IMG/VR virus record: IMGVR_UViG_3300035698_010479
Span: 124,001 to 188,000 of that record
Direction: 5' to 3' (one strand)
DNA: 64,000 bases
The notes beneath the pieces were generated by a model that did not search any database, was not told the DNA's origin, and was given only the letters and a program-made list of their open reading frames with translations. Shown here in pieces: positions 7,969 to 42,287 of the stretch (its first letter is position 1; the number at the start of each line of letters is the position of its first letter). A program made the translations under genes and the position numbers.

Positions 7969-10728
7969 CTATAAAATTAACTGTGGAGTAATATTACTTA
8001 GGATGTAGTTGTTATGATAAACATCTCCTTCACCTACTATAAAATAACTTGGTCTAAACGGTACCTCTAAGTAGTAGAAACCTAGTTCATTTGTAACGGT
8101 TGCCCCTAGTAAATCACCATTGGTTTGATCATATACTAAAATTAATGTACTTATCGCCTTGTTATATATAGTAGTATAGCCTCTTAAGAAGTAATTACTG
8201 AAGTCTATTAGGTTATCAGTTAAGCTAGCATTCATAAATTGAATAGTGTCTTCGGATACTTGCTTAGAAAAGAAAAAAATCTCAGATATTTTACCAATAA
8301 AACCTTGTTCTGGATCACCAAGTACTATAGGTAGTGTATTAACATTTACACCAGTAGAATTTCTATACAATATGTCTCGCTCAGAATTACCCAACAACGT
8401 GTTTAAGTCAGAAAATTCACTAGTTATACCAAACGTGTACGATGACCAATTACTAGACAAGGTGTATTCCCTTAAATCTAAACTATTAGAAAGCCCGTTA
8501 TGCCTATAATCCAGTGCTAATACATTATGTGCTTTTGACATTCGTCTGAAAAAGCAATTATTATACTTTACTACAAAGTTTGAAATATACACATAAGTTA
8601 AACCTGGTGTTTGTTTAAGACTATCAATCTCTATGCGTACATCTTGAAAACTTGTCATATTAAGTGTAGCAGCATTTACCCATACAGAATTATAAAGATA
8701 AGATATCTGCATGATAGTACCAGTTACCTTAACCTTTATACTTCCTGTAAAAAAATCAACTACCCCAGCAGTTAAACTCTTACCCCATAGTGCAGTATAG
8801 GTGCCACTGGTACATTGTTGCCAATACATACTGGTCAAATTATTAGAACGTAGAATACTATATAAATAATCCCTAGAGTTATCATCAAAAATAAATCTAA
8901 CAGCTATTCGCCAAAAATCACTTAGAGTACCCCCTGTTATATTAAAATCAAAAGAAAATTCAAATTCTTGGCCCAAGTAATAAGTTGTTCTAAGTCTAGA
9001 ATCACTAGCATCGGAAAATTTTAGTTTATCACCGTCCAAAAAAGCACCGCCTACAGGCATATACCAAAGATAACTATCGGGTAAACTACCAATAAGCCCA
9101 GAAAAAGTATCACTAAAACTATCCCTAGTTATTAAAGGTGTTTCTTGATGGTATAAAGTAGTAGTAGTTTCAGAATACAAACCTTTAGTCATAAATATAT
9201 TACCTGATGTTATTGTACCAAATAGTAATACCTGTGCTGTGTTAGTATAATCGTATCTGAAAGAATTACCTAGGTCAGCATAGCTAGTTAAACTGTTAAA
9301 TTTTATAGCATAACTACCTATATTATCTGAAGTAATAGATACATCACTTAAAAAACCAACTGGTGAATTTATATCCGCAGAGTTTACATAACCGAATGAA
9401 GGGTTAAAATGATGTACTGAGCTAAAAGAGCCTTTCCAAACATATTGTGATGGGGTACTAGGGGAGTCCAAAAATACTGAATCTACGCGTAACATATGAT
9501 CTTTGCTGTTCAAACTCCCACAGTATATGATTGTGTTATAAACAGAATCACCTTTAAAAATACAAAAACCACGCGTAGTAGTTAAGTCGTAAAAACCCTC
9601 TAGACCAAATTCAGCGAATACCTTTACACCACTAAAATTTATACCATCTAAGGATTTGCAAACTTTTAAAGTTGTACCCATAGCTACAGTACACGAAAAC
9701 CACATATAATAAATATCTTTTTCAAGATGTACTCGATGTATATCAATAAAATTATTAATAGACCCTACGTCTTCTGCACGTAATACTAAATTTGGGGTAG
9801 TCCAAACTTTACCATCTAACGATTCACTGTAAAATACACTATGTTTGTAAGTATTAGCAGCTCCTATACCAGTGAACCACATTTTGTATAGTGACCCTTC
9901 TTTACTTACTGAAGGAGATCTTTTACCTGATGAAGTACTATAGGCACCTGAGATATCCAAACCATCACATTTAGTAAAATTGTACCATAACTTACCATCA
10001 ATTGATTCACAATAGTATAATTGATGCAAATAAGAAGAGTTTGATTGATTACCTGAATACCACATTTTAAACAAACCATCTTCGTATATTACAGTACCAC
10101 CTGACTTATATTTAGAAGTTTCTACAGGTAGTGGATCAACACATATTGTAAAGTTAGAAAAACTATATAAGTCGTAAGATTCACAATAGTAAATAACCCC
10201 GTGCCAATACCCGCCTATAGGTGTTTGTGTTACGTACCACAGCATGTATAAATCACCAAGCTTAAGCAGTGTCATCGGTACACCACCATATAAGTCATAC
10301 TGAGTGTTAGAATCACTTGGAATCAGTGGGCTTATAGATAAATCTCCGGCTTCTGAAATAAATGATAAATTGGGTGTATGTTTTATATCATAGTAAAAAT
10401 AGAATATATTTACATACTTACTAGATATTTCAACAGGTCTAAACCAAAAAACTGCTTTAGCTGTAACGTGGTCCCACATATCTAGTTCAGCAAATAGTTG
10501 TATTTCTTCACCATTTACTAGTTGAGAAAAAGCTACCTTAGTTCTATTAGCATAGCTACTGCCAGCTACTGACATATAAGTAAATATATCACATATATCT
10601 TTTTTAGAGAATCCAGATATGTCTGATATCCTAAATAAAATAGGTACTAAGTCAATACTTTCACCAACTCTATCTTTAGGTATTGAAAATTGTAATCTCT
10701 TCGACCCACTCCAGCCAACTAGACTCAT
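7969..10728 (-). CDS. modular virion/fibre protein: DUF2341-like N-terminus, glycosidase-like beta-propeller, lectin-like region, C-terminal beta-sandwich
   Basis: GW...VPILFRI...ELDMWD...FYFYYD (DUF2341-like); repeated blades VIYEDGLFKMWYSG..YCESIDGKLW and VSKEGSLYKMWFTG..YSESLDGKVW. Confidence 0.6.
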   Translation of the reverse strand: MSLVGWSGSKRLQFSIPKDRVGESIDLVPILFRISDISGFSKKDICDIFTYMSVAGSSYANRTKVAFSQLVNGEEIQLFAELDMWDHVTAKAVFWFRPVEISSKYVNIFYFYYDIKHTPNLSFISEAGDLSISPLIPSDSNTQYDLYGGVPMTLLKLGDLYMLWYVTQTPIGGYWHGVIYYCESYDLYSFSNFTICVDPLPVETSKYKSGGTVIYEDGLFKMWYSGNQSNSSYLHQLYYCESIDGKLWYNFTKCDGLDISGAYSTSSGKRSPSVSKEGSLYKMWFTGIGAANTYKHSVFYSESLDGKVWTTPNLVLRAEDVGSINNFIDIHRVHLEKDIYYMWFSCTVAMGTTLKVCKSLDGINFSGVKVFAEFGLEGFYDLTTTRGFCIFKGDSVYNTIIYCGSLNSKDHMLRVDSVFLDSPSTPSQYVWKGSFSSVHHFNPSFGYVNSADINSPVGFLSDVSITSDNIGSYAIKFNSLTSYADLGNSFRYDYTNTAQVLLFGTITSGNIFMTKGLYSETTTTLYHQETPLITRDSFSDTFSGLIGSLPDSYLWYMPVGGAFLDGDKLKFSDASDSRLRTTYYLGQEFEFSFDFNITGGTLSDFWRIAVRFIFDDNSRDYLYSILRSNNLTSMYWQQCTSGTYTALWGKSLTAGVVDFFTGSIKVKVTGTIMQISYLYNSVWVNAATLNMTSFQDVRIEIDSLKQTPGLTYVYISNFVVKYNNCFFRRMSKAHNVLALDYRHNGLSNSLDLREYTLSSNWSSYTFGITSEFSDLNTLLGNSERDILYRNSTGVNVNTLPIVLGDPEQGFIGKISEIFFFSKQVSEDTIQFMNASLTDNLIDFSNYFLRGYTTIYNKAISTLILVYDQTNGDLLGATVTNELGFYYLEVPFRPSYFIVGEGDVYHNNYILSNITPQLIL

Positions 10729-11111
10729 ATATCATCTCCTGTAATCGGTGAAGGTACCAATCTTTTAACTATAAGATGGTTGTATTCTATGTTATCCGAT
10801 AGTACTACAATAAAACACGTACCGCTGGTAGTAACAGGTAAAACAAAATTACCAGTCAACACATCTGATGTGCAACTACCCACCATTCTATATGTACTAC
10901 TATCATACGCGTATATTTGAGATTCTTTCGGTAAGGTTAATTCACTGACATTGCCGCTAAAATAATAATATTTAGGCGTGTAGTATACTTTTTTTGTATA
11001 TTTATGCAGTACTTCTACACTAAAACTTGCTATCTTTATTGAGTTAGCATCAATATTAGGAGTACTTTCTAGTATTTCTAAAGTATAATTTGCTATTCTA
11101 AGATCAGTCAT
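10725..11111 (-). CDS. small virion protein paralogous to the C-terminus of 7969..10728
   Basis: YFSGNV...IYAYDSSTYRMVGSCTSD...FIV...YNHLIVKRLVP aligns with YFLRGYT...LVYDQTNGDLLGATVTN...YFIV...HNNYILSNITP. Confidence 0.6.
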   Translation of the reverse strand: MTDLRIANYTLEILESTPNIDANSIKIASFSVEVLHKYTKKVYYTPKYYYFSGNVSELTLPKESQIYAYDSSTYRMVGSCTSDVLTGNFVLPVTTSGTCFIVVLSDNIEYNHLIVKRLVPSPITGDDI

Positions 11112-11113
11112 GA

Positions 11114-12766
11114 TTAACCAGATATAGTAGTAAAACCAAATTCATGGGTATTTAAAAAGATATCTTGCCACTGTTCTGTATTACCTGGAGTACTTTCGTA
11201 AATAAATGATAAATTTTTATAATTTATACTTGGAAGTAATCCTGATGTATTATATACACTGCCGCCACTTACTACAGTCGCAGCTAATTTAAAATTAACA
11301 TCTAGGTCTCTTTTAGCTATAACATTCGCACTAATTGCAAGTATATTAGGTATATTAAATGTAGTGGTAAAATCGTAACTATCTGAGCTACCTATTGTAG
11401 AGGAATATATATATTTATTACCAGCTTCTTCTGGTAATTGCCAAGATACAAAAAATTTTGGTGAATTAATATGGTACGGATCATTATTAGCTTCATATGC
11501 GGAATAGCCTAGGCTAATATATGCTACAGTAGTCTCTTTGTAATATATATTTATAATAGCTAATATACTATTACTTGTAGCTTGCCAATTAGGTAAGTCT
11601 ACTAATTCCTGCACTAAATTTTTAATATCTCTATAAGCTAAATTATCACCTTGTTTTAGATAAGTTTTATTAAATGTTGGTGTCCTAGAAGACAAATCAG
11701 TATAAGAAGTTACCTGTGCTGCGGGTGTGCCTGAAAGTTGCAAAAAAAGTAATTGTTCATTTGTACTTGGTTGTTCTGGTATATGTAACTGATTCAATAT
11801 TAAATAAGCACTTATTATTTTGGCATTTTTTGGGATGTTAATATTTGAAAATCTAAACCAAAAATAATTATTTTTAGTGTTAATATCCATGTACAATGCT
11901 GTATTACCTGGTACGGTAACACTAGTATTATTAAACAACCATAATACAGTAGAGGTAGTTGACCGCATGTAACTACCATCATCTAACCCATCATATTCGT
12001 AATAAATTCCACTATATGTGGTGGTATTCAATGGGTAAGTACCATTGAGTATTATTTCAGAATTAACACTTCCTGAATAAGTAGTTTCTGGTACAAATTG
12101 TTGTAAACTTCCAGTAGTAGCAACATTGAGAGTAGAAATAGTACAATTACCTAAAAAAGCATTATTTATACTACCAAGTGTATTTAATATGTATAAATCT
12201 TCAATATATAAAAAACTGCCAGGTGTTGAAGAACTATCTTTTTTACCAAATTTAATATTATTTACCGTATAAGGTGCTGTTGTAGCAGTAGATATATCAC
12301 TGATAGTAAATACACTACTATCGTCAATACGTATGAAAAAATTGCCACCAGTATTACTAAATTTAACTTTTATTTCTAAGTAACTCCATTTGTTTAATAC
12401 AAATATTTTATTAATACCGTAATTACTATATACACTACCGGAATACCAATGTAATCCAGTAGGTGTTACAACTAGTCTGCATTGTTCGATATCATCATAA
12501 CAAAATGCTACATAAAAATGATCTGGAACATCCAATATACGAACGTACGCAAAACCAATAATAAGCTCATCGTAGTAGTTATGTAAAGACTTCTGTAAGT
12601 AATCACCTGAAATATAAGATGGTATACAATTAGCAGCTAGTACATTACCACCATTTCTACCTAAATGGCCCTCTTTTATAAAAAAGCCACAATTAGCCGT
12701 ACGTTCTTCCCACTTCAACGGTAAATGTAAATAATTTTTAAAACTATCAAAAAATAAAATGCTCAT
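11114..12766 (-). CDS. putative virion protein with concanavalin-like and carbohydrate-binding-like beta-sandwich domains
   Basis: ILFFDSF start, NKWSYLEIKVK..IRID, YIEDLYI, WFRFSNINIPKNAKIISAYL motifs are common in phage fibre/adhesin proteins. Confidence 0.5.
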   Translation of the reverse strand: MSILFFDSFKNYLHLPLKWEERTANCGFFIKEGHLGRNGGNVLAANCIPSYISGDYLQKSLHNYYDELIIGFAYVRILDVPDHFYVAFCYDDIEQCRLVVTPTGLHWYSGSVYSNYGINKIFVLNKWSYLEIKVKFSNTGGNFFIRIDDSSVFTISDISTATTAPYTVNNIKFGKKDSSSTPGSFLYIEDLYILNTLGSINNAFLGNCTISTLNVATTGSLQQFVPETTYSGSVNSEIILNGTYPLNTTTYSGIYYEYDGLDDGSYMRSTTSTVLWLFNNTSVTVPGNTALYMDINTKNNYFWFRFSNINIPKNAKIISAYLILNQLHIPEQPSTNEQLLFLQLSGTPAAQVTSYTDLSSRTPTFNKTYLKQGDNLAYRDIKNLVQELVDLPNWQATSNSILAIINIYYKETTVAYISLGYSAYEANNDPYHINSPKFFVSWQLPEEAGNKYIYSSTIGSSDSYDFTTTFNIPNILAISANVIAKRDLDVNFKLAATVVSGGSVYNTSGLLPSINYKNLSFIYESTPGNTEQWQDIFLNTHEFGFTTISG

Positions 12767-12769
12767 AGA

Positions 12770-14938
12770 TTATTCCTTCCAAAAATCTTCTGCTTGAATA
12801 TGTGACCAATTCATATTATTATATGAACCTGGCGGCACATAAGTAAGGTGCTTAAACTTAAGATGTACATCTGTAGGTAATGGTGGTTCATAAGCTTTTC
12901 CTACTATTATGGTAGTTAGATTATTGCTACTATTAATCCTTTTAGGCGTAATAGATGCTGATAAACTCTTAAAATTATTAAGTACACCTGTTATAGTGGC
13001 TTTACATGATATGGACCAGTGCTTAACTTTATGAACAGTTATATAGGCATTCAAATCATTTGATGGATATGTAGTAGCTGATATATACGCCTCTAGGTTG
13101 GTATGCCTGCTGACGGATACTCTATCAATTAAATCATTGAGTGCTTGGTCAAATGTATCATAGTTTTTTATGTTGAAAATAAATAGCTTTTTGACTTTTA
13201 TCCTTGAATATAGTTTATTAGGATCGTTTGAAAAACCAGATACCTGCACTTTCCAAGTTCTTTTTCTATCAACCTTATAGACTTTATTTTCTTGTGGCAC
13301 AAAGAAAAAATGATAGTCTTCTTCGGAATTTGTAAAAAACATCATCTCAACGAATCGTCTCCAGTATTCTTCAAATCTATCTAAATTTACTACAACCTCT
13401 AAAGTTTTAGGATTGACCCAAGTAGGTACAGTAGTAAAGTTAGCTAACGGTTTTGCAATTATTGATGCACTTAAGTCTTTAGAATATAAAATACCAGTAA
13501 TAGTTGCTTTTAAAATATTAGTTGCCTTAGACCCTAATAACATAAACGTGTCAAATACTTTATGAGTGTTTGGTTTAAGGTTACTAGTAATATTTAAGGT
13601 AACATATGGTTGTGTTGCTTCATAAATATTTCCCACACAACTTATATAGTTAGTTTGTACATGGTTTACTACGTTTATATACGCGGATAAATCTAACACA
13701 TTATCAGCCCCGCCTGCGTACCAGCCTATAATAAAGGCCCCCAGGTCTAATCTTTTAATTGTATATAGATGGGCAGCTAAATTCACATAACTTGATTGAA
13801 GACAGTTGTAATTAATTACTGCTCTCAAATCCTTATGTTCTAAAAGTGATATAGATATGATTCTCTTTATATTAATAGTTTTTGGTACTATTTCAGCTTT
13901 TAGATCTAGATATTTACCGGTGGCATTTATATAAGCAAGAAAAAAAGACGACCCTATAGCATTTATATAGGCATTTAAATCTTGTGTATCAAGACCTATT
14001 ATACTAGCATATAAATCATATGACATATTTTGCGCCTGCATACCGTAAATATAAGCAGGCATATCTTTAGGTTTTACAGCGTTAATATTGGCTGGTAGGT
14101 CGTAAGGCTGATAACCAACTATTGTTATAGCACTTAAGTTAGCTGCAGCGTAGCCATGTAAATGGGCACTTAAATCTACAGGAGTAACACATTTAAGGTA
14201 TGCATTTAAATTTTTATATATTTTAAACGCTCCAGCGAATATAGTGGCTTTCAAATCATATACTGAAAAGGAGTGAATAAAAGCAGCTAAATCACTTATT
14301 TGCCATCCAATAATAGTAGACTTGATATCTGACTTGCTCTTAAATGTAATTTTACCAAAATTTACAGCTAAGTCTGAAGATCCTTTAAATAATACGCCAG
14401 AAATAAATGAGCTTAAATCCCTCAACTCAATGATATTTAGTAGTGCCTGTAGGTTCACCGCTGGAATGGTCTGTAATAAAGAAGATATATCATTATAATT
14501 ACTATATAAAACTTTAATTGCTGCTGGCAAATCATAAAATAAATCGGTTTCACCAAAAATGTCTGCGTGTAAATCAATAAAACCAGAAAGATTAAACCTA
14601 CCACAAGTTATAAAAGAACCTAAATCTCGTATGCCTCCAAAAACGCATGGCAGTTCCAGCACTTGTATACCATTATTACTATAACCTACAACCACTTTTT
14701 TACATGTTTTTACGTAGGTGTATGTTGAATCCTGAAATAAAGGCCATACCTCTACGGATGCTTCCAGATCCTGAGTACCATGATAGTAGAATTTAAGTAC
14801 AGATATAGCGGCTTGTAAATCACTAGTACTAAGTGCATTAGCTAAAAAATCAATATTAACAAAATCCGGGGAAGTGTAGCCTTCATCTGTAAAATTAAAT
14901 AATACACTACTACCTTTAGGTGGGCGATAACTAGACAT
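12770..14938 (-). CDS. repeat-rich putative fibre/shaft protein
   Basis: About 30 degenerate (D/N)LxAxI repeats; located in the structural block. Confidence 0.5.
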   Translation of the reverse strand: MSSYRPPKGSSVLFNFTDEGYTSPDFVNIDFLANALSTSDLQAAISVLKFYYHGTQDLEASVEVWPLFQDSTYTYVKTCKKVVVGYSNNGIQVLELPCVFGGIRDLGSFITCGRFNLSGFIDLHADIFGETDLFYDLPAAIKVLYSNYNDISSLLQTIPAVNLQALLNIIELRDLSSFISGVLFKGSSDLAVNFGKITFKSKSDIKSTIIGWQISDLAAFIHSFSVYDLKATIFAGAFKIYKNLNAYLKCVTPVDLSAHLHGYAAANLSAITIVGYQPYDLPANINAVKPKDMPAYIYGMQAQNMSYDLYASIIGLDTQDLNAYINAIGSSFFLAYINATGKYLDLKAEIVPKTINIKRIISISLLEHKDLRAVINYNCLQSSYVNLAAHLYTIKRLDLGAFIIGWYAGGADNVLDLSAYINVVNHVQTNYISCVGNIYEATQPYVTLNITSNLKPNTHKVFDTFMLLGSKATNILKATITGILYSKDLSASIIAKPLANFTTVPTWVNPKTLEVVVNLDRFEEYWRRFVEMMFFTNSEEDYHFFFVPQENKVYKVDRKRTWKVQVSGFSNDPNKLYSRIKVKKLFIFNIKNYDTFDQALNDLIDRVSVSRHTNLEAYISATTYPSNDLNAYITVHKVKHWSISCKATITGVLNNFKSLSASITPKRINSSNNLTTIIVGKAYEPPLPTDVHLKFKHLTYVPPGSYNNMNWSHIQAEDFWKE

Positions 14939-15046
14939 TAGTTATACCTTTGTCTGGATAATTACCTAAGTTTTTAATACTATGTGTATAAATGTTCATC
15001 TATATAAACCTCATATACTTAAATTAAATATTAAAAACTAAATAGT

Positions 15047-18235: not shown

Positions 18236-18243
18236 ATATTCCC

Positions 18244-33418: not shown

Positions 33419-33453
33419 ATAACGTTACCTATATTAAATCGTAGTTAGATTAA

Positions 33454-36063
33454 TTATAATATCCTCTTAATTATAGGAGTTACATTATGTTCTCTTATAA
33501 CATTATCAACTAATAATTCTATACTACTTTCTTTTAAACCATTTCCGCCATCAAAAACAGCGAATTTAATTTTGGTTGTTCTAGTGTTTAGTCCACGAAC
33601 ACATGCTCTTGGTAAAAAGCTAGTAGGATCTACAAAGGGCTCTAGGCTATCAGATAACCTAAATCTCCACATGTCATAAAGTATGTTTTTTTGCCCAGAT
33701 GAGTCATTTATTTGAATTGAAATTTCAACTACTTGACCATAGTAGAATATATTTTCATTTAAATATGTTATATTATAACCGTTAGGTATTACTGTGAAGT
33801 TGAATATCTTTATTCTATTATTTACATATAAATCTAAAGAAGTAATATCAACACCTACTTCACTATCAAGAATATCAAAACTTATATTAGTACCGAGAGG
33901 TATATCTACTGAATCACGTATAGGGAATTCGTTTACTATATAAGGTGGTTTGTAATCTGGTATTACAGTAAACCAATAGTCGAACTCTATCTTATTTGGT
34001 GGTATGGCATTATCATACACTGAAAGATATACATAAACAATCGCGTCATTATGAAAATATTCTGGTGGTGTAAATAACACATCTAGCCCAATCAAACCTC
34101 CCCCGGCGTCAAATTCAGTAACAACTAATAAACTACTTTCTGAAAAATCTATAAATTCAGTGTCGCCCACATAAGAAATTTCACGTACTCTAAATACTAA
34201 TGTACTTTTATTTAAATCAAAGCCGTAAGGAGCTAACCGTAACCATATGGTTGCATTTACATTATTTTTACTTGAGAATGGTACAGGTACTGCATCTATT
34301 AAAAACCTAAACTGGGCTATGAAAACATTATCAGTATTACTTCCTACTGGAAGGTGTCTACTTATGTATGTTTGACTTAAAGCACAGGAGCCTAAATGAG
34401 TAGTTAGTTGTTTAAAAGCAGAACTACTAGATTTTTGTGCTTTTTGTGGTATATCAAAATCTCCATCGAAATTCTGAAGCTGTCTTACAATTGCAACCTT
34501 AGGTAGATTATCAAATACTTCATGGCCACCAGGCATCTTAAATTTACTGTAACTTTTTAATATAAATTTGGATAAGAAAGATACTAGTTGTTTAATAATA
34601 TTAGTAGTAGCTTTAGAGTCTATTTTTTGTGTAATTATAGGTGCACCAAAACCAGCTATATCTAGCCTATCGAATAAAAACTTAGCATCTAGGTATAGTA
34701 GTATAGATGCAAATACATAGATACTGCCTGTTAGTATATTTGACCCATCAGTATAGGCTACTATTTTTATATCACCATTTATATTAGATATCAAAGATGA
34801 GTTATACCAAGTACTAGTATATGTTATGCTGCCTACACCATTCAAATCTGTTGTGGCTTCTTTATTTACATCACCCCATACGCCACCAGTATCTCCGTAT
34901 TCCTTATCAAAATGAATTGTCTTATTGGATATACCCATACCGTATTGGTCAGTTACTTTGGCATATATAGTTATAGTATCCTGGTTTGCAATTCTACGGG
35001 TGTCTGTATATAAGATTAAACAATCTGAATACCTATAAGGGCTGTCTTCATGATAATTGTAAGTTGTCCAAGTAATTTCAGCAAATGTGCCAGTATTAGA
35101 GCGCATCATTTTACTTTTCTGTAAACGATACATTGAAGATACAGTAAAAGCTATAGCAGACACATCTAAAACAGTACTACTATTTAATTTTGTAACATTT
35201 AGTCTACTGGATTTCATTATACTGTAATCTAGTATATCAATATAAATTAATTCTGAGTTTTTAATTATGGCTACTGAACCATAAAAAGGTAATCCGTAAT
35301 TCGCAGTTTTAATATTGTTATACAAGGCACTCTCGTGATGCCCTTTGGTTGCTCCTGTAAAATTATCTAATACAAGCATGGCACCCCTAGTTGTGTCTAC
35401 ACCATAACCAATATCACTGAATAAATATATATCGCCTAGGTAAGTAACAGGGTCCCCAACATTAAAATAGCTTTTAAGTGGTGTACCTGAGGAAGATTTA
35501 ATGTATACAGTAGTACCAGATACGGATGTGGCTGTTACCTCTTCAAAAGCACCAAGATAAGAGGTATTACTACTTGGACCTATGTATAATCTTGTACCAG
35601 AAACTACATTATCTATATTATTAAGCAGTATATTACCGGTACCTGTTATAGTTGTAAGTGATAAATTTGTGTAGTACCTACCCAAGGCCATGGACCTACT
35701 TACTATAGTATCATACCCACTAGATGCTTTAGTTATAGTATAATCTAAATCTAATCTAGTATTTGTTTTATTCAAATTCCATTTTTTTATAGACACAGAA
35801 GAAGTTAGATTACTTTCCATAGTAAAAAATACCATACCTGATTGTAAAGCACTTAAATCTCTTGGGCCTATATAATCTAAATAGTAAATTTTTGTATCTT
35901 GTGTGATATTAGGATTAAAAGTATATGATACAGTTGTCACACCAGTACTATTTTTTATTAACAACCTGGCTGTAGCCGTAGTAGTATCTACTGTAGCGAA
36001 AGTACCTAATAAAGGTGCTAAACAAAAATTAGACTGTGCTGCATTTATATTTTCCTGTGCCAT
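33454..36063 (-). CDS. putative tail fibre paralog 3 with Big_1-like and further Ig-like domains
   Basis: AKVTDQYGMGISNKTIHF...TTDLNGVGSITYT (invasin-type Ig); DYKPPYIVNEFP...GVDITSLDLYVN repeats; N-terminus related to the next two genes. Confidence 0.6.
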   Translation of the reverse strand: MAQENINAAQSNFCLAPLLGTFATVDTTTATARLLIKNSTGVTTVSYTFNPNITQDTKIYYLDYIGPRDLSALQSGMVFFTMESNLTSSVSIKKWNLNKTNTRLDLDYTITKASSGYDTIVSRSMALGRYYTNLSLTTITGTGNILLNNIDNVVSGTRLYIGPSSNTSYLGAFEEVTATSVSGTTVYIKSSSGTPLKSYFNVGDPVTYLGDIYLFSDIGYGVDTTRGAMLVLDNFTGATKGHHESALYNNIKTANYGLPFYGSVAIIKNSELIYIDILDYSIMKSSRLNVTKLNSSTVLDVSAIAFTVSSMYRLQKSKMMRSNTGTFAEITWTTYNYHEDSPYRYSDCLILYTDTRRIANQDTITIYAKVTDQYGMGISNKTIHFDKEYGDTGGVWGDVNKEATTDLNGVGSITYTSTWYNSSLISNINGDIKIVAYTDGSNILTGSIYVFASILLYLDAKFLFDRLDIAGFGAPIITQKIDSKATTNIIKQLVSFLSKFILKSYSKFKMPGGHEVFDNLPKVAIVRQLQNFDGDFDIPQKAQKSSSSAFKQLTTHLGSCALSQTYISRHLPVGSNTDNVFIAQFRFLIDAVPVPFSSKNNVNATIWLRLAPYGFDLNKSTLVFRVREISYVGDTEFIDFSESSLLVVTEFDAGGGLIGLDVLFTPPEYFHNDAIVYVYLSVYDNAIPPNKIEFDYWFTVIPDYKPPYIVNEFPIRDSVDIPLGTNISFDILDSEVGVDITSLDLYVNNRIKIFNFTVIPNGYNITYLNENIFYYGQVVEISIQINDSSGQKNILYDMWRFRLSDSLEPFVDPTSFLPRACVRGLNTRTTKIKFAVFDGGNGLKESSIELLVDNVIREHNVTPIIKRIL

Positions 36064-36065
36064 TT

Positions 36066-38636
36066 TTAATCCACCTGTGTTACAGTAGCATCTATAGTAA
36101 CTACCCTTAAAGCAGTACCAGAGGTATACCCTGTATCTGCTCTTCCTGTATTATAAAAAATATCCGTATTTACTAATTTAGTAGTTACAAAACCTATAGG
36201 ATCATCATCTTTAAAAGTAACAGGCCTGTTTACAACACCTTGACCGTATTGGTCTAAAGTTACTGAAGTAATAACAGCGGTATTTCTACCTGTAGCTGGT
36301 AATATATGTGTTGATGCATCTACTGATATAAAGTCTATAAAAGATCTTATAGGTGATATTTGATAGTTGTAAGTAGGCCATGTATAATCAGTGCCATAAT
36401 ATGAGGCTTCTAGTTGAAGTCTATATAAGTTATCTCCATCTATGTCTATGTCATATACCGATATTATAGTAGATTGATTTTTTCGTACATTATCTATAGA
36501 CATTGTACCATAATACATATTAGAATTTGTTGGATACCTTAGGTAACCGTTGGAAAAAATTAAATCATTAAAATATGCTCCAGATATAGTGGTGAGGGAA
36601 GAATGTAGGCCTAAAGATATAGCACATTCCTGTACATTAACGGTTAAAGACGTAAAATCAATCCAAGAACTTTCAATACCTGAAACTGTTGTTTTATAAC
36701 TTAGTCTTAAATCTGTACCAATTTTAGATGCTTTAAACTTATATGATAGCTCAGGTAACTCTTGTAAAGTAGGTGCATACTGAGTTAGTGTACCATTTAC
36801 TGTTATACCAATTAAACTGGTGTTATTTATATTAGTAAAATAACCAGTTGTATTATTATAAAAATCATTTATTTCGTATATGGATAATGCTCTACTGAAC
36901 ATTTTAAATTCATCTAAATTAAAATTCCTACCTGGATATTGTGTGCTAGTACCAAAATAAAGGGCGGCTCCTGTGTCTATTGTCGTGTTAGCAGCAAGTA
37001 CAAAAGTACCTTTTAACTCCTTGTTGTAATAGACATATAACATATTGTCTTTTTTTATAAATGCTACATTAAACCATATATCTATTGGTGAATTAGTAAC
37101 AACTACTGTCTGATTAGAGTTAGTGGCTGTAGTAGTCACACCGAAAGTTAAAGTATTAGCACCATTTAAAAACCATATATAGGGTGACCTAAAGGAACCA
37201 GAACTCTTTTGTAATATGGAATGAACTGCGGCATCATAACCGCCAACTAATTTTAACCAGAAAATCAAAGAAAAATCTTTGCCGTCTTTACCTACATCTA
37301 GTAAACTAGTACCTGCCACATTAACACTTGTAGCAGGTATGAAATTTGCTGCTCCAGATACAGTGGTATCGTAACCAACTACATAAGTAGGTGGTATTGT
37401 TTTATTGGTTATAAAGCTATTACCGGAGTAGTCATCAAAATTATTATTTAATGGGAAATAAAGTAACAATCCTGAATTATTAATACTATTTGAGAAGTCG
37501 GAGGATCTTCTATAACCAATCTCTATTTTAGTATTAGATGTTTTAAAATCAAACCCCATATAATGATTATACTGTCTAAGGTCTACCCCTGAAAAGGTGG
37601 TTACTCCCCATAGAGTACCTGAAACCTGTACTTCAAAGTTATTCAATAGTAAATAAGTAGAATCTAATTTATCATAACCATTACCATAAGTTGACATGAA
37701 TAAGTTATTATTTTGTATTTTTGGGTCACCCGAATATACAGACCATTTATTACTATTAGGTAGAGCGTTGTCAATATCAATAAAATCATCACTAGCTCGT
37801 ACATCTGCGCTATATCTGTATAGGTCCCTCTGGTCCCTTAGTTTAAGATTTGTGCCTTTAACGTATGCTAGAGTAAATACATCTGGAAAATTATGTAATA
37901 TATTATTCAATCTGGTAAATTTTGAAGCAGTAATGTTTTTATATTCTACATCCTGAAACTTACCTATTTCTACACCGGTATAAGGATTTAGTACTATTAA
38001 TGCACCATTATTATCTGATATGTAGTTAGCGTAGTTATTAAAAACATACACTGATGATATGATACTTACAGGATCTCCAGCAAAATAATTGTTTTTAAGT
38101 GGTGTAGTTAAGTATATATTTTGTCCAGTTATACCACTAACTGTAACTAACTCTCTTTGATTAAATTTATTAAAACCCAAACCAATTATTGTACCAGGTA
38201 TTACAGCGAATTCAACGTGTTCATTCATAGATATAACTAAGTCCCCATCACTTGCATCATTAGTTAAATCAGAGTTATAATGTTCTATAGATATTGTGTT
38301 TATATCATATTTTATAAATCCTGATATGTTGGATAGTACAAATTGATTTACCATTACACAAACAAAGTTTTCTAGATTCCAGCATCTTATAACATAGCTT
38401 AATCCATCTGTAAATTTTTGTAATGACCAAAAATTATACCCATCATATTGAAGACAAATCACATCCCCAACAACATAGTTTACAAAATTATTAGGTATAT
38501 CAACTGGGTACTGAAATGTAGTGGCCCCAGCTGATGATTTCTGCGAAAGAATTCTAGGAGTATAGTCTAATAAATAGAAATAGCCATCCCGAACGACCAT
38601 ATGTTTTTGATGGAATTTAATATTCTCATAAGCCAT
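36066..38636 (-). CDS. putative tail fibre paralog 2 with LamG insertion and C-terminal Big_1-like domain
   Basis: LLLYFPLNNNFDDYSGN...FSLIFWLK...WFNVAF...LDEFKMFSRALS (LamG); LDQYGQGVVNRPVTF (Big_1). Confidence 0.65.
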   Translation of the reverse strand: MAYENIKFHQKHMVVRDGYFYLLDYTPRILSQKSSAGATTFQYPVDIPNNFVNYVVGDVICLQYDGYNFWSLQKFTDGLSYVIRCWNLENFVCVMVNQFVLSNISGFIKYDINTISIEHYNSDLTNDASDGDLVISMNEHVEFAVIPGTIIGLGFNKFNQRELVTVSGITGQNIYLTTPLKNNYFAGDPVSIISSVYVFNNYANYISDNNGALIVLNPYTGVEIGKFQDVEYKNITASKFTRLNNILHNFPDVFTLAYVKGTNLKLRDQRDLYRYSADVRASDDFIDIDNALPNSNKWSVYSGDPKIQNNNLFMSTYGNGYDKLDSTYLLLNNFEVQVSGTLWGVTTFSGVDLRQYNHYMGFDFKTSNTKIEIGYRRSSDFSNSINNSGLLLYFPLNNNFDDYSGNSFITNKTIPPTYVVGYDTTVSGAANFIPATSVNVAGTSLLDVGKDGKDFSLIFWLKLVGGYDAAVHSILQKSSGSFRSPYIWFLNGANTLTFGVTTTATNSNQTVVVTNSPIDIWFNVAFIKKDNMLYVYYNKELKGTFVLAANTTIDTGAALYFGTSTQYPGRNFNLDEFKMFSRALSIYEINDFYNNTTGYFTNINNTSLIGITVNGTLTQYAPTLQELPELSYKFKASKIGTDLRLSYKTTVSGIESSWIDFTSLTVNVQECAISLGLHSSLTTISGAYFNDLIFSNGYLRYPTNSNMYYGTMSIDNVRKNQSTIISVYDIDIDGDNLYRLQLEASYYGTDYTWPTYNYQISPIRSFIDFISVDASTHILPATGRNTAVITSVTLDQYGQGVVNRPVTFKDDDPIGFVTTKLVNTDIFYNTGRADTGYTSGTALRVVTIDATVTQVD

Positions 38637-38644
38637 ATAATCTC

Positions 38645-40501
38645 CTAGTTGGTTTGTTGTACTGTAGCTGTTACCAACACATCTTGGGCAAGTACACCGG
38701 CTTTATAGACTGTTTGTACAAAACCATTTGCGTCTGTATTTAATTCAGTACCACCAGTGATAGAGCCATCTCCACCTCCACCTTCTGAGAATGTCACACG
38801 CCTATTTTTTATCGGTTGAAGAAACTGGTCTTTTACCCAAGCATTTATATTAGTTGTACTTAAACCATTGGCTGCTATAATAGCTGGAGAAGCTGATAAG
38901 GAAATAGATGTTACAAAAGATTCTAGAGGTGATAAAAAGTAATCAAATGCGGATGATCCCTGTAGTCTATACAGATTATTCCTATCCACCGCCATATCCT
39001 GGAGTATAATTGCTACGTTACTTGATATATTGTCCATAACCATAGAGCCATAATAAGGTAACGCAGTAGCACCTGTATATACCATTACAGTACCTTCTAC
39101 GAATGTTAGATTATCAAAAGTATTTATAATATCAGTGTCAGTAGCATTTTTAGAAGATATTACTAGTTGTGCATCTGAATTAAACATTTCAACAACTCCT
39201 AAATACCTCCAAGGTGTGAACTCAGTTGAGCTAGTGGTTTTATAATAGAAATGTACATCCGAAGCAACACGTTTGATTCTAAGACCGTATATATCAATAT
39301 TGGTTAAAGGATCTTCTTCTATACCAGAAACCGTCGTCAAAATACCATCAGTAGCTTTTCTATATATTACAGAAAAATTCTGATGCTCACCTGAGCCAAA
39401 CTCTGTACTATAGCCTCTTGATAACTTACAAAATCTATTCTGTTCGTTAGGAAAAATTAACTTAATGGAATTCTCCATAAAACCAATACCACTATAAGTA
39501 GCATCATAAGCAAGTAATCTACCATCTATTGTGACATCAAAATCCTCTGGTAAGTAGTATTTTGATTGGATACATTCTTCAGACTGTGGTGAGTGTAGTG
39601 GGTTTAAGTAAAGTGTACTACTTTGTATAGTAGGTGTACCACTAATAGTAGTCCATCGGTTAGAATCAATTGTATTAAAGGTATCATTAAATACATCAGC
39701 ATCATAAATATTGCGCTTATATATTGAAGTGTTTACAAATAATGTATTTGTACCTTTAGCATATAATAACATATCCTTACTACCCAAATCTTGGAATGAT
39801 CCTATCTTATAGAATGTACAAGCAGTAATAGCCTTGTATGCACCACCAGAAAACTTGGTTTTAAATGTACCATCTATGGAGCTGAATTTATATAAAGCAC
39901 CAGTAGTACCATCAATACCATTATAATTATTAAATAACCAGATATTTTTATGAAAATTTATTTCAGCACCTACTGCATAACCATAGCTAACTGGAGTACT
40001 TAAAACTACACCTCCGAACACAGTATCAACTATAGCAATATCCTCTTCCTCACCGTTGGCATTAGGTCCTATATGTAAGACAGCTCCTGTGATAACCTCT
40101 GGATTATTTGTATACTCATCCAAATACAATACTAAATCTCCTGGTATAACCAACTCAGTTAATTTTGTATGGTAGTGTTCAATAGTGAAACAATCCGAGT
40201 TGTATGTTAAGCTACCTGAAGAATTTAAAGTTATAGTTTGCTGTAATTTAGCTAAATAATTATCAATTCGCCATCTTTTTATAAATATAGTAGTTGATGG
40301 TGATTCCATAGTCCAAAAATTAACACCATCATATTCTAAGGACTTCACTGTATTATCTAGTAGAATATCGCATGGATATGAAAACGCTGTATTACCATCA
40401 TCCGTTTTTTGAAGTAGTGCATCCTGGTCCTCATCGAACGTATAAAAGTAACCATTACTTACCGTAAAATTGGACTTTCTTATATTAATATTTGTTGCCA
40501 T
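38645..40501 (-). CDS. putative tail fibre paralog 1 with C-terminal Big_1-like domain
   Basis: LSASPAIIAANGLSTTNINAWVKDQFLQPIKNRRVTFS (Big_1). Likely start is MATNIN at 40501, by alignment with paralog starts MAYENI and MAQENI; the ORF track starts at 40534. Confidence 0.65.
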   Translation of the reverse strand: MATNINIRKSNFTVSNGYFYTFDEDQDALLQKTDDGNTAFSYPCDILLDNTVKSLEYDGVNFWTMESPSTTIFIKRWRIDNYLAKLQQTITLNSSGSLTYNSDCFTIEHYHTKLTELVIPGDLVLYLDEYTNNPEVITGAVLHIGPNANGEEEDIAIVDTVFGGVVLSTPVSYGYAVGAEINFHKNIWLFNNYNGIDGTTGALYKFSSIDGTFKTKFSGGAYKAITACTFYKIGSFQDLGSKDMLLYAKGTNTLFVNTSIYKRNIYDADVFNDTFNTIDSNRWTTISGTPTIQSSTLYLNPLHSPQSEECIQSKYYLPEDFDVTIDGRLLAYDATYSGIGFMENSIKLIFPNEQNRFCKLSRGYSTEFGSGEHQNFSVIYRKATDGILTTVSGIEEDPLTNIDIYGLRIKRVASDVHFYYKTTSSTEFTPWRYLGVVEMFNSDAQLVISSKNATDTDIINTFDNLTFVEGTVMVYTGATALPYYGSMVMDNISSNVAIILQDMAVDRNNLYRLQGSSAFDYFLSPLESFVTSISLSASPAIIAANGLSTTNINAWVKDQFLQPIKNRRVTFSEGGGGDGSITGGTELNTDANGFVQTVYKAGVLAQDVLVTATVQQTN

Positions 40502-40506
40502 ATATA

Positions 40507-41004
40507 TTATCCATATAAAATTGTGGGTATCCAATGAAAATCATATTCATAAGGGTCCCCTTTAACGATCACTTCCGATGTTATATCAAAATCTACTTCG
40601 CCATTATTTAAGGTTACCACCATATCTGATAAGTCTATACCTGATGATGGGTGCTTCTCTTCTATAACAAAACGTATATGTTCTGTTATAGGTACATTAA
40701 TACCCACGGGGGAAAAATTTTTTAAAGTCGGTGGGTATCTATCTACATCAAAATCCTGCCAATCTATTATGCTACACATATCAGCAATAGCTTTATTTAT
40801 TTCAGGCTCTATAAAGTCTTCTGTAACTTTGTGTACAAATCTTGGTACTATCTTATTACCACTAGAGTCCAGAGATGCGGTTCCTATCTCTAGCAACCAC
40901 ACCATTTCACCCTCTTCATCCTTTAAAGCATATTTACGTAAGTTTAAATTAAACTTTACTGCTTTTCTAGGATTTAAAGTATGCTTTACAATTATATCAG
41001 ACAT
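40507..41004 (-). CDS. virion protein with C-terminal Ig-like domain
   Basis: DRYPPTLKNFSP...SGIDLSDMVVTLN resembles the Ig-like repeats of 33454..36063. Confidence 0.5.
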   Translation of the reverse strand: MSDIIVKHTLNPRKAVKFNLNLRKYALKDEEGEMVWLLEIGTASLDSSGNKIVPRFVHKVTEDFIEPEINKAIADMCSIIDWQDFDVDRYPPTLKNFSPVGINVPITEHIRFVIEEKHPSSGIDLSDMVVTLNNGEVDFDITSEVIVKGDPYEYDFHWIPTILYG

Positions 41005-41969
41005 TAAGAAAAGTCAATTTGATTTATCATAATTTTTGCCATATATCTTAATAATTCATCTATATCATTGTAGTAACTATCAGGTGAGTTATCTGGATCT
41101 ACCTTCTGTAGAATCTGAACATATGCTCCTGAAGCTACAGTGTAACTGTTAGGTATACCTATAAAACTATTAGTAGCAGTTGTAGCTACAGTTATATTAG
41201 TAGTGTTGACTGCCAATGCAGTAAAATAGTTACTCTTAGTTCCATCAGTAATAACAAGTGCATCACCAACATTAACACCGGTAGTCATATTTATAACTAA
41301 TGTATCCGCGTTCGCAGTATAATCAGATAATAGGGGTGCTTCCAATATAGTTATATCAGATAGTACTTCACTCATAACAGGCTGGTCAAAACCCAACATT
41401 GCCGCACAATCGTTTACAGGGCTATTTCCAACTCTAACAGATGACCTTGCAGGGCCTGTAAAATAGTTAGATATTGTACCTGAGGATATAAAAAATTTAT
41501 TATCCGAAAACTTTACTGAACAGTTTTTATAAGCCAGTTTAAAACCGGCATCAACTCCAGAAGCAGTAACCACACGTAGTTTGGCCTGTATATCCATAGC
41601 AATTTCTTCACCACGTTTTAATACGCCATTATTATGATCTAGTGTTATATTATAATAACCATTAGAAGTACCACTAACTGTAGCGTCCATTTTTACACCG
41701 AGAACGCAATGTGTGGAGTCTAATGCAAATTTACCATTTGTGCCTTTAAACCCTGAGCTTTTAACCCAACCTATCTTGCCCCCAGCTATATAAAGACTCT
41801 GAATAGATGTCCTAGCTGTAGTATCTGAATAAGCTGATGTCGATGCAGATATTAAATATTTTTCATCACCTTCTGAACCTGAAGGTACTAAAATAGTTGT
41901 GTCCAATGTAACTTTTTTTGTCACACCAGGAAAATTTTCTAAATCTTGTACGTCTAAGCTAATGGACAT
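41004..41969 (-). CDS. putative virion structural protein (321 aa)
   Basis: GGAGG RBS; carries the shared ...KFFISSGT...SSVRV...AAMLGF domain. Confidence 0.55.
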   Translation of the reverse strand: MSISLDVQDLENFPGVTKKVTLDTTILVPSGSEGDEKYLISASTSAYSDTTARTSIQSLYIAGGKIGWVKSSGFKGTNGKFALDSTHCVLGVKMDATVSGTSNGYYNITLDHNNGVLKRGEEIAMDIQAKLRVVTASGVDAGFKLAYKNCSVKFSDNKFFISSGTISNYFTGPARSSVRVGNSPVNDCAAMLGFDQPVMSEVLSDITILEAPLLSDYTANADTLVINMTTGVNVGDALVITDGTKSNYFTALAVNTTNITVATTATNSFIGIPNSYTVASGAYVQILQKVDPDNSPDSYYNDIDELLRYMAKIMINQIDFS

Positions 41970-41999
41970 TATTATATCCTCCGTTATTGAATTATTATA

Positions 42000-42287
42000 T
42001 TATACATAAAAAAAAGCTAATCCGGTATTTAAAAGGTACTGACACCCACTATAGGTGCATTGATAACCCCAAGTACCCCCAACATTAATCGGACGCATAT
42101 AATAGTGTTTGTTATCATCTCCTATGTGTGCTGCTTTTGCTGGCAAAGTACCTGATACAGAGATATCTAATAAGTGTCTAGTCCTTATATCTGTAGCTTC
42201 TATATCGAAAGGGCAAGGTGCATAACACTTACCGACATGATCAAATACTTTATATTCTGGAAAATTTCCACATGTATAGTCTGCCAT
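42000..42287 (-). CDS. hypothetical Cys-containing protein (95 aa)
   Basis: ORF packed in the tail cluster. Confidence 0.6.
   Translation of the reverse strand: MADYTCGNFPEYKVFDHVGKCYAPCPFDIEATDIRTRHLLDISVSGTLPAKAAHIGDDNKHYYMRPINVGGTWGYQCTYSGCQYLLNTGLAFFYV

What the first reader, a model, noticed from the sequence alone, without database searches (positions are those of the whole stretch)
7969..42287. T-x-S-G motif strongly over-represented across unrelated exterior virion proteins
Seen, counted by eye: at least 23 T-x-S-G occurrences, often TT(V/I/Y/F)SG. There are 5 in 36066..38636, 4 in 25450..30984, 3 each in 38645..40501 and 11114..12766 (which ends in TTISG), 2 each in 41004..41969 and 32804..33418, and singles in four more genes, plus near-matches (VVSGT, SVSGT, VASG). 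A rough composition-based expectation is about 5. The motif is not conspicuous in the TMP or the replication proteins. Inference: a shared sequon for post-translational modification of surface proteins (for example O-glycosylation by a phage or host glycosyltransferase), or a docking signal for a decoration protein.
Basis: partly seen in the sequence, partly recalled or inferred. Interest (0 to 1): 0.6.

Follow-up and report, generated by a model that had tools for sequence, protein, structure and literature searches.

The report
Clade-wide T-x-S-G motif on phage tail proteins
The outer tail proteins of an uncultured jumbo phage, and of about 80 metagenomic relatives, carry far too many copies of a six-residue motif (Thr-Thr-Val/Ile-Ser-Gly-Thr) that their folds do not need, so it looks like a selected tag, possibly a sugar-attachment site, though its function is unproven.

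Summary
The 16 proteins of 7969..42287 have 25 T-x-S-G sites against 5.9 expected. T-hydrophobic-S-G is 19 against 2.2, and TT-x-SG is 11 against 0.5. Local composition, codons or DNA words, paralogy and hidden shared domains do not explain this. Pooled tail and fibre proteins of T4, crAss001 and A511 show no enrichment. The enrichment recurs in 80 metagenomic relatives (585 against about 147). It is confined to the distal tail module: the tape measure, the proteins just after it, the capsid candidate and the replication genes lack it. In the family of the 550-aa protein, clade members end in TT(I/V)SG and carry 13 times the expected count. A large outgroup of about 340-aa homologues has ordinary residues at the same positions, so the fold does not need the motif.

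My best reading (0.45) is a selected recognition tag for a trans-acting factor. Ser/Thr O-glycosylation by the conserved phage GT4 pair is the leading candidate (about 0.25) and is unproven. The main rival (0.3) is a purely structural clade habit: a strand with an exposed Thr/Ser ladder and a buried Gly. Predicted structures place most sites in or at the ends of β-strands, not in exposed turns.

The parts
36066..38636 (-). 856-aa receptor-binding-type tail protein (Laminin_G_3 domain at 451-589; ConA-like lectin fold). It has 5 T-x-S-G sites.
   Evidence: Sites: TVSG165 (38133-38144), TFSG347 (37587-37598), TVSG425 (37353-37364), TVSG650 (36678-36689), TISG683 (36579-36590). Pfam hit, AF2 model, Foldseek. 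In 13 homologues, 3 of the 5 sites are widely conserved.
38645..40534 (-). 629-aa paralogous tail fibre/RBP with a C-terminal Big_1 domain. It has 3 sites.
   Evidence: Sites: TISG296 (39638-39649), TYSG346 (39488-39499), TVSG401 (39323-39334). Big_1 hit. Only site 346 aligns with a site of the 856-aa paralogue.
33454..36063 (-). 869-aa third paralogue. It has no exact site, only the near-matches VVSGT, SVSGT and SSSGT.
   Evidence: Orthologues in L002 and L019 do carry exact sites.
32804..33418 (-). 204-aa two-domain Ig-like protein (C-terminal half is Big_5-like). It has 2 sites.
   Evidence: Sites: TLSG36 (33302-33313), TISG178 (32876-32887). T36, S38, G39, T40, T178 and G181 are invariant in 21 homologues. 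In the AF2 model site 36 lies inside strand 35-44 at pLDDT about 90. Big_5 matches 2 of 21 members, best E 3.6e-6.
25450..30984 (-). 1844-aa tail protein. It has 4 sites, clustered in a Thr/Ser-rich stretch at residues 119-184.
   Evidence: Sites: TSSG119 (30619-30630), TCSG155 (30511-30522), TVSG176 (30448-30459), TTSG181 (30433-30444). Three of the four are shared with relatives.
41004..41969 (-). 321-aa tail protein. It has 2 sites.
   Evidence: Sites: TVSG97 (41670-41681), TASG135 (41556-41567). D-A/N-T-V/I-S-G-T is kept in all four compared phages.
42000..42287 (-). 95-aa tail protein. It has 1 site, and it is the first motif-bearing gene after the tape measure block.
   Evidence: Site: TYSG78 (42045-42056), shared with L001 and L002.
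11114..12766 (-). 550-aa protein, an expanded member of the very large phrog_2448 family. It has 3 sites, one of which forms the C-terminus (TTISG-COOH).
   Evidence: Sites: TYSG229 (12071-12082), TYSG250 (12008-12019), TISG547 (11117-11128). Eleven of the 14 clade members (the window protein plus 13 homologues) end in TT(I/V/L/A)SG. The 118 outgroup homologues instead end in sequences such as K-V-T-A.
7969..10728 (-). 919-aa last protein of the tail module. It has 2 sites.
   Evidence: Sites: TSSG265 (9925-9936), TFSG541 (9097-9108).
10725..11111 (-). 128-aa protein. It has 1 site.
   Evidence: Site: TTSG94 (10821-10832).
15047..18262 (-). 1071-aa tail protein. It has 1 site.
   Evidence: Site: TTSG25 (18179-18190).
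18244..25062 (-). 2272-aa tail protein. It has 1 site.
   Evidence: Site: TVSG1459 (20677-20688).
31179..32732 (-). 517-aa highly conserved protein with no site in this phage. It was used as the marker to fetch 80 related loci.
   Evidence: The same protein family carries the motif in more distant relatives (134 against 60.6).
47769..64000 (-). Tape measure protein, used as a negative control. It totals 7473 aa and runs off the right end of the window.
   Evidence: T.SG is 3 against 4.1 expected over the whole protein. Orthologues carry PF10145.

Best explanation
The motif is a short linear tag with consensus [T/V]-T-[V/I/Y/F]-S-G-[T/V/I]. It has been written many times, independently, onto β-strands and strand ends of the distal tail proteins (baseplate, fibre and receptor-binding proteins downstream of the tape measure). 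The phages concerned are an uncultured jumbo-phage clade. Purifying selection keeps the motif in place. Because homologues outside the clade build the same folds without it, it most likely serves as a common recognition element for one trans-acting factor made during infection. The leading candidate is O-glycosylation of the Ser and/or Thr by the clade's conserved pair of GT4 glycosyltransferases and the adjacent SAM methyltransferase. A shared assembly chaperone is the other candidate. What is shown: the enrichment, its specificity, its clade-wide conservation, its independence from the fold, and its restriction to the distal tail. What is inferred: that a trans-acting reader exists, and that it is a glycosyltransferase. 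Of the 0.45 confidence, about 0.25 goes to glycosylation and 0.2 to another reader.
For: Enrichment and specificity. T.SG is 25 against 5.9, T-hydrophobic-S-G is 19 against 2.2 and TT.SG is 11 against 0.5. Near-variants (S.SG, T.SN, T.NG, T.GG, T.SA, T.AG) are not enriched.

Protein level, not DNA. Ser is encoded by both AGY and TCN, and identical peptides use different codons.

Not a general property of β-rich tail proteins. In 45 tail and fibre proteins of T4, crAss001 and A511 (23.6k aa), T.SG is 17 against 12.0, T-hydrophobic-S-G is 3 against 3.7 and TT.SG is 0 against 1.0.

Clade-wide. In 80 related loci (245k aa), T.SG is 585 against about 147. The excess is 3.0-4.6x in every identity bin down to 45%, and TT.SG is 9-18x.

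Many independent positions. There are 113 in-register site clusters, 24 with at least 4 members and 12 with at least 10. Twenty permuted or variant control motifs give 0-16 clusters with at least 4 members and 0-4 with at least 10; SGT, the other half of the same extended motif, gives 19 and 9.

No shared domain behind the sites. Profile-profile comparison of the motif-masked flanks finds none of 273 pairs in register. Conservation in the position matrix is limited to positions -1 to +4.

Also enriched in swapped-in, non-homologous central modules of related fibre proteins: 12 against 2.7.

Fold-independent. In the 550-aa family, clade members have 56 against 4.3 and end in TT(I/V)SG. The 118 outgroup homologues have T-hydrophobic-S-G at 14 against 11.8 and end in sequences such as K-V-T-A. 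At site 229 the outgroup has S-x-G.

Restricted to the distal tail. The tape measure has 3 against 4.1 and the capsid candidate has 0. The nine proteins after the tape measure in three relatives have 2 against 3.8, and the replication and glycan modules of relatives have 4 against 2.4.

Candidate enzymes. There are two GT4 genes and a methyltransferase at genome 116.7-122.5 kb, with orthologues on the contigs of L001 and L002. Distant relatives add GT9, GT-D, FkbM-type methyltransferases, acetyltransferases and PIG-L next to them. The best solved relative of the 421-aa GT is the chlorovirus GT-B enzyme B736L.
Against: There is no evidence of any modification. The GT4 genes lie among replication and nucleotide-metabolism genes (PolA, clamp loader, NUDIX, DHFR, ThyA, PD-(D/E)XK nuclease) and match Pfam GT4-conflict. 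They could therefore act on DNA, on a small molecule or on the host envelope. The GT family is far wider than the tail-protein families, with more than 1000 homologues. No sugar-nucleotide synthesis genes were found.

Of 7 modelled sites, 3 lie inside continuous strands, 3 at strand ends and 1 in coil. The middle residue is hydrophobic, and the Gly falls on the side of the strand that is probably buried. That pattern fits a structural role, or recognition before folding.

Thr at position 0 exchanges with V, I and L in homologues. The capsid candidate lacks the motif. SG dipeptides as a whole are raised 1.6x, so part of the signal is a broader habit.
Confidence: 0.45

Rival explanations
1. The motif is a purely structural clade habit. 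It is a favoured way to build a surface β-strand, with Thr/Ser hydroxyls on the exposed face and V/I plus a small Gly on the packed face, possibly with a β-bulge at S-G. It spread through this clade's tail proteins for stability or solubility, and nothing reads it.
For: Sites lie in or at the ends of predicted strands. The position matrix alternates: V at -3, V/I at +1, G at +3, Y at +5 and I/V at +7, against T/S at -4, 0, +2, +4 and +6. Thr at position 0 exchanges with V, I and L. The Gly at site 229 is also conserved in the outgroup. One site sits in a Big_5-like Ig-domain stretch...T-I-S-G-V-K-D-x-x-G-N. SG dipeptides are generally raised.
Against: Folding physics is universal, yet tail and fibre proteins of three other phages show no enrichment. 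Outgroup homologues of the same fold use ordinary residues at the same positions. Chemically similar variants (T.NG, T.DG, S.SG, T.SN, T.SA) are not enriched. The capsid candidate and the proteins after the tape measure lack the motif.
Confidence: 0.3
2. The motif is a docking element inside the virion. The strand pairs with a common partner, or with copies of itself, by β-strand addition during baseplate and fibre assembly, or it binds a decoration protein.
For: It is restricted to proteins that assemble together at the tail tip. In one family it forms a strictly conserved free C-terminal pentapeptide, and C-terminal strands often dock.
Against: Up to 5-7 copies occur per protein, many in mid-strand positions of different domains.
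Confidence: 0.12
3. The motif reflects hidden common ancestry. The sites would all descend from one repeated ancestral domain, too diverged for BLAST, in which T-x-S-G is the conserved signature.
For: Ig-like (Big_1, Big_5-like) and ConA-like domains recur in these proteins. One pair of sites is truly paralogous.
Against: All-against-all BLASTP aligns only one site pair. With the motif masked, ±40-45-residue profiles of the sites never align in register: 0 of 115 pairs with 4-sequence profiles and 0 of 273 with deep profiles. There is no conservation beyond positions -1 to +4. The structural contexts differ.
Confidence: 0.04
4. The signal is chance, composition or a DNA-level signal.
For: The motif was picked by eye after the fact. 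Thr, Ser and Gly are common in these proteins.
Against: None of 20,000 shuffles reaches the count and block shuffles give the same result. The motif is 3-5 orders of magnitude beyond the best motifs of control sets. It is replicated in 80 further loci. Codons vary.
Confidence: 0.01

Closest known systems
Virus-encoded protein glycosylation at unusual sequons (chlorovirus major capsid protein, N-T-x-T)
   Same: A virus with its own glycosyltransferases decorates exterior virion proteins at a short virus-specific sequence, not the cellular sequon (PMC9614988). The best solved relative of the 421-aa GT4 here is the chlorovirus enzyme B736L.
   Different: That system is N-linked, acts on the capsid and has been demonstrated chemically. 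Here the putative acceptors are Ser/Thr on tail proteins and nothing has been demonstrated. The acceptor of B736L itself is unknown (PMC9614988).
Mycobacteriophage virion O-glycosylation (Freeman et al. 2023, as summarised in PMC12619734)
   Same: Phage-encoded glycosyltransferases modify virion proteins. The glycans sit at C-termini, and one family here ends in the motif.
   Different: The targets there are the capsid and tail-tube C-terminal tails, and I know of no defined sequon. Here the capsid candidate has no site and the motif is sharply defined.
Cytoplasmic Ser O-glycosylation of β-rich or repeat adhesins: autotransporter heptosyltransferases (GT9-like) and GT4 enzymes acting on Ser-rich or Ser-Asp repeats (own knowledge)
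   Same: A cytoplasmic GT adds sugar to Ser in a short recurring sequence of a β-rich surface protein. GT4 is present here, and GT9 and GT-D are present in relatives.
   Different: Those substrates are tandem repeats within one protein. Here single sites are scattered over at least 12 unrelated proteins.
Big_5 (PF13205) bacterial Ig-like domain
   Same: The C-terminal half of the 204-aa family matches Big_5 in 2 of 21 members, and its site lies in ...T-I-S-G-V-K-D-x-x-G-N. From memory, this resembles the family's conserved strand.
   Different: This explains at most one of the 25 sites. The window's own copy does not reach significance.
Bacteroidota general O-glycosylation motif D-(S/T)-(A/I/L/V/M/T) (own knowledge)
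   Same: It is a three-residue motif with a hydroxyl residue followed by a hydrophobic one, spread over many exterior proteins.
   Different: That system is periplasmic and host-encoded and requires Asp. The phage DnaK points to Desulfobulbales rather than Bacteroidota. Only a few sites here have D before T.

Membership tests
Protein glycosylation sequon | Short motif over-represented on exterior proteins relative to composition and to comparable proteins elsewhere | tested here: met
Protein glycosylation sequon | A glycosyltransferase is available in the same system | tested here: inconclusive
   Two GT4 genes are present and conserved in relatives. Their acceptor is unknown and their context is replication and nucleotide metabolism.
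Protein glycosylation sequon | Acceptor residues are solvent-exposed | tested here: inconclusive
   Only secondary structure was available. Three of 7 sites are in mid-strand, 3 at strand ends and 1 in coil. Side-chain exposure is inferred from sequence alternation only.
Protein glycosylation sequon | A glycan is covalently attached at the motif | not testable with these tools
   This needs mass spectrometry of virions or of co-expressed proteins.
Generic β-strand/turn motif of β-rich proteins | Similar enrichment in β-rich tail proteins of unrelated phages and in homologues of the same fold | tested here: not met
   Controls give T-hydrophobic-S-G at 3 against 3.7. Outgroup homologues give 14 against 11.8.
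Internal repeats or paralogous domains | Sites align with each other within homologous segments | tested here: not met
   One aligned pair by BLASTP. No pairs in register by hhalign.
DNA-level signal | A constant nucleotide word underlies the sites | tested here: not met
   Codons vary, and Ser uses both AGY and TCN.
Big_5 Ig-like domain signature | Significant match to PF13205 covering the site | tested here: inconclusive
   Two of 21 family members match, best E 3.6e-6. The window copy has no significant hit. This concerns one site only.

The most novel reading that the evidence does not exclude
A whole clade of jumbo phages with micrometre-scale tails marks its baseplate and receptor-binding proteins with a defined O-glycosylation sequon, T-hydrophobic-S-G, read by phage-encoded GT4 enzymes. 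To my knowledge this would be the first sequon-directed protein glycosylation system described in a phage.
Probability: 0.25. Interest if true: 0.85.

Novelty: new variant of a known kind. Interest (0 to 1): 0.6.

Why it matters
If the motif is a modification or recognition tag, it gives a sequence handle for predicting which virion proteins of uncultured phages are decorated, and at which residues. It would also link a widespread but unassigned phage GT4 family to a substrate. The hypothesis can be tested directly by co-expressing a 204-aa domain with two enzymes. If the motif is purely structural, it is still an unusually clean case of one hexapeptide solution being adopted convergently at dozens of positions in unrelated proteins of a single lineage.

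Tried and rejected
- Local composition: block shuffles down to 8 residues do not explain the count.
- Lower-order dipeptide effects: the expectation rises only to 8.9.
- DNA word or codon bias: rejected.
- Paralogy: explains one site pair.
- Hidden shared domain: hhalign on masked flanks finds nothing in register.
- General β-protein property: controls from T4, crAss001 and A511 show no enrichment.
- Avoidance of deamidation-prone Asn-Gly: NG is only slightly low (0.89, against 1.1-1.3 in controls), and the outgroup positions are not N-G.
- GT genes explained away as hydroxymethyl-pyrimidine DNA glycosylation: not supported, because the adjacent enzyme is a canonical ThyA (297 bits against the thymidylate synthase equivalog) paired with DHFR. 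DNA modification by another route remains possible.
- Substitution spectrum at motif columns, to separate an acceptor-like from a structural pattern: uninformative.
- Correlating GT presence with motif density: not possible. All checked relatives have both, and whole metagenome records could not be searched.
- Searches that found nothing: the viral-contig scan, tblastn against cultured phages, a literature search for TxSG, and PDB sequence searches for the 550-aa family.
- Side-chain burial: could not be measured because model coordinates are not exposed.
- The DL.A motif that rivalled T.SG in the scan is a different thing: 16 repeats inside one protein.

Full report
**Setting.** The window is bases 124001-188000 of a 228,458-bp single-contig virus record with GC 0.34. 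All main genes in the window are on the minus strand. Reading in the direction of transcription, a giant tape measure protein comes first (7473 aa in total; orthologues carry PF10145). Nine mostly small proteins follow (47767 down to 42290). Then come the 16 proteins of the finding (42287 down to 7969). The replication genes follow: the sliding clamp at 6763..7896, the DnaB helicase at 2617..4086 and DnaJ at 172..936. The 16 proteins include three paralogous fibre or receptor-binding proteins with Laminin_G_3 and Big_1 domains. Calling them exterior tail-tip proteins is a reasonable inference from gene order and domain content. The AF2 model of the 856-aa protein matches ConA-like lectin jelly rolls of many sugar-binding proteins. 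I read this as a lectin-type fold resemblance and nothing more.

**The observation.** I count 25 T-x-S-G sites in the 16 proteins against 5.9 expected from composition.
- None of 20,000 per-protein shuffles exceeded 16.
- Shuffling within blocks of 100 down to 8 residues leaves the expectation at 6-7.
- A lower-order expectation from the T.S and SG frequencies gives 8.9.
- The middle residue is hydrophobic in 19 sites (2.2 expected), and TT.SG occurs 11 times (0.5 expected).
- SGT is equally enriched (25 against 5.9). The full consensus is [T/V]-T-[V/I/Y/F]-S-G-[T/V/I].
- Near-variants (S.SG, T.SN, T.NG, T.GG, T.SA, T.AG) are not enriched.
- The one comparable hit in this region, DL.A, is 16 repeats inside a single protein.

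**Simple explanations excluded.**
- DNA word: codons at the sites vary freely. Ser is encoded by both AGY and TCN, and the five TTVSG peptides use five different codon strings.
- Paralogy: all-against-all BLASTP aligns only one pair of sites.
- Hidden shared domain: conservation around the sites stops at positions -1 and +4. With the motif masked, profile-profile comparison of the flanks never aligns two sites in register. This holds for 4-sequence profiles (0 of 115 pairs, no better than random windows) and for deep profiles of 24 conserved site groups (0 of 273 pairs).
- General habit of β-rich phage proteins: in 45 tail, baseplate and fibre proteins of T4, crAss001 and A511 (23.6k aa, similar Thr/Ser/Gly content), T.SG is 17 against 12.0, T-hydrophobic-S-G is 3 against 3.7, TT.SG is 0 against 1.0 and hydrophobic-SG is 0.79x. 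In those controls the residue before SG is mostly polar. Here it is V, Y, S or T.

**Relatives.** The phage has no cultured relatives but many metagenomic ones.
- Three syntenic contigs (L001, L002, L019) show the same enrichment in the nine orthologous proteins: 9 against 3.0, 21 against 3.2 and 12 against 3.5, compared with 17 against 3.2 in the window.
- Using the conserved 517-aa protein as a marker I fetched 80 further loci at 45-92% identity. Their 521 same-strand proteins (245k aa) hold 585 T.SG sites against about 147 expected. The excess is 3.0-4.6x in every identity bin. T-hydrophobic-S-G is 5.5-9.6x and TT.SG is 9-18x, while T.NG, T.DG, T.SN, T.SD and T.SA stay near 1x.
- The sites form 113 independent in-register groups, 24 with at least 4 members and 12 with at least 10. 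Twenty permuted or variant control motifs give 27-99 groups, 0-16 with at least 4 members and 0-4 with at least 10. SGT, the other half of the same extended motif, gives 116, 19 and 9. The excess therefore comes from somewhat more origins and much stronger retention. The 4-phage alignments say the same.
- Non-homologous central modules swapped into related fibre proteins are also enriched: 12 against 2.7.
- Within the clade the motif is absent from the tape measure, from the nine proteins after it (2 against 3.8 in three relatives), from replication and glycan modules (4 against 2.4), and from this phage's capsid candidate.

**The most telling result.** The 550-aa protein (11114..12766, phrog_2448) belongs to a family with 2121 detectable relatives.
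- The 14 clade members (the window protein plus 13 full-length homologues at 26-51% identity) carry 56 T.SG sites against 4.3 expected. Eleven of the 14 end in T-T-(I/V/L/A)-S-G.
- The 118 outgroup representatives of about 340 aa have T-hydrophobic-S-G at 14 against 11.8.
- After the shared ...A-E-F-G-hydrophobic, the outgroup proteins end in ordinary strand residues such as K-V-T-A.
- At site 229 the outgroup has S-x-G where the clade has T-(Y/F/V)-S-G.

The same fold is therefore built without the motif. The clade has overlaid it on pre-existing strands and turns.

**Structure.**
- In the AF2 model of the 856-aa protein (pLDDT 70), sites 165 and 683 lie inside strands. Sites 347 and 650 lie at strand C-ends, and site 425 is in coil just before the first lectin-domain strand.
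- In the 204-aa protein, the invariant V-T-L-S-G-T lies inside a confidently predicted strand.
- That protein's second site sits in a Big_5-like stretch.
- The position matrix from 330 non-redundant contexts alternates weakly. This suggests V/I, G and Y on one face of the strand and T, S, T on the other.

**Glycosyltransferases.** A scan of most other proteins of the genome found two GT4 enzymes (PF00534) at genome 118270-119385 and 121204-122472, just left of the window.
- They lie among PolA, a clamp-loader subunit, a KdsC-like phosphatase, a SAM methyltransferase, NUDIX, DHFR, a canonical ThyA and a PD-(D/E)XK nuclease.
- No GT2 (above cut-off), GT9, FkbM methyltransferase, nucleotidyltransferase or epimerase was found.
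- The 421-aa GT has more than 1000 homologues.
- Its best solved relative is chlorovirus B736L, a GT-B enzyme of unknown acceptor (PMC9614988).
- More distant relatives keep the GT4-Thy-GT4-methyltransferase core and add GT9, GT-D, FkbM methyltransferases, acetyltransferases, PIG-L and a Macro domain.

The clade therefore has glycan-building capacity. Its target could be protein, DNA or envelope, and this is open.

**Interpretation.** A motif that is sharply defined, scattered over unrelated contexts, retained by selection, restricted to one set of virion proteins and dispensable for the fold behaves like a recognition tag. I give 0.45 to a trans-acting reader: 0.25 to Ser/Thr O-glycosylation by the GT4 pair and 0.2 to another reader such as a shared fibre chaperone.

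The main rival, at 0.3, is a purely structural clade habit. It fits the strand location, the hydrophobic middle residue, the T-to-V/I exchanges and the general 1.6x excess of SG. It does not explain why other phages and outgroup homologues lack the motif. In-virion docking gets 0.12, hidden ancestry 0.04 and chance 0.01. About 0.08 is left unassigned, for readings not thought of here.

**Limits.** Gene calls are my own longest-ORF calls. Expectations assume independent residues, backed by empirical controls. The related loci are not phylogenetically independent, which is why I counted in-register site groups. Only two proteins were modelled. No reads tool was used.

Noticed in passing
window 47769..64000 (continues to genome 194190): The tape measure protein is 7473 aa, and orthologues are 7601-8076 aa with PF10145. 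By the usual rule of about 1.5 Å per residue, this implies a tail longer than 1 µm.
   Followed up: partly
window 12770..14938: A 722-aa tail-module protein contains 16 copies of a D-L-x-A-x-I repeat at spacings of about 12-30 residues. It has no T-x-S-G and no family match.
   Followed up: partly
window 33454..40534: Three adjacent paralogous fibre proteins (869, 856 and 629 aa) share an N-terminal region of about 350 aa and a C-terminal part. Their central modules differ. Metagenomic homologues swap the central module too.
   Followed up: partly
window 11114..12766: The 550-aa protein is an expanded member of a very large phage family of about 340 aa (phrog_2448, 2121 relatives, no solved structure). 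The clade-specific insertion of about 210 aa starts right after the motif at residue 229.
   Followed up: yes
genome 116747-122472 (window -7253..-1528): A SAM methyltransferase, a GT4, NUDIX, DHFR, a canonical ThyA and a second GT4 lie in a row. A KdsC-like phosphatase lies just beyond. Distant relatives (L103, L104) expand this into a large glycan cluster with GT9, GT-D, FkbM methyltransferases, acetyltransferases, PIG-L, a Macro domain and radical SAM.
   Followed up: partly
genome 93353-95209 and window 172..936: The phage encodes Hsp70/DnaK and DnaJ. The nearest bacterial DnaK sequences (58-62% identity) are from Desulfobulbales (Desulfopila, Desulfocapsa, Desulfofustis), which hints at the host lineage.
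   Followed up: partly
genome 1-83 kb (alignment A2 set): The family scan lists three phiEco32-like COOH-NH2 ligases, two Peptidase_C26/GATase proteins, two radical SAM proteins and two proteins with a PEP-CTERM motif. It also lists NAD salvage genes (NAMPT, NAPRTase, PRPP synthetase, NAD kinase), a ClpB-like AAA protein, a TROVE domain and RNA ligases.
   Followed up: no
genome 207928-210942: The large terminase ORF is 1004 aa. It has an N-terminal extension matching an unknown PHROG and an endonuclease PHROG. Two proteins elsewhere match an intein splicing domain, and ribonucleotide reductase hits appear twice.
   Followed up: no
genome 95903-101215 (+ strand, outside window): A second small cluster of fibre-like proteins lies outside the window. 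It includes a 390-aa protein with 5 T-x-S-G sites (0.3 expected) and a protein whose C-terminus resembles that of 10725..11111.
   Followed up: partly
window 31179..32732: A 517-aa Thr/Gly-rich protein is by far the most conserved gene of the module (73-92% identity among close relatives). It has no family match, and its role is unknown.
   Followed up: partly
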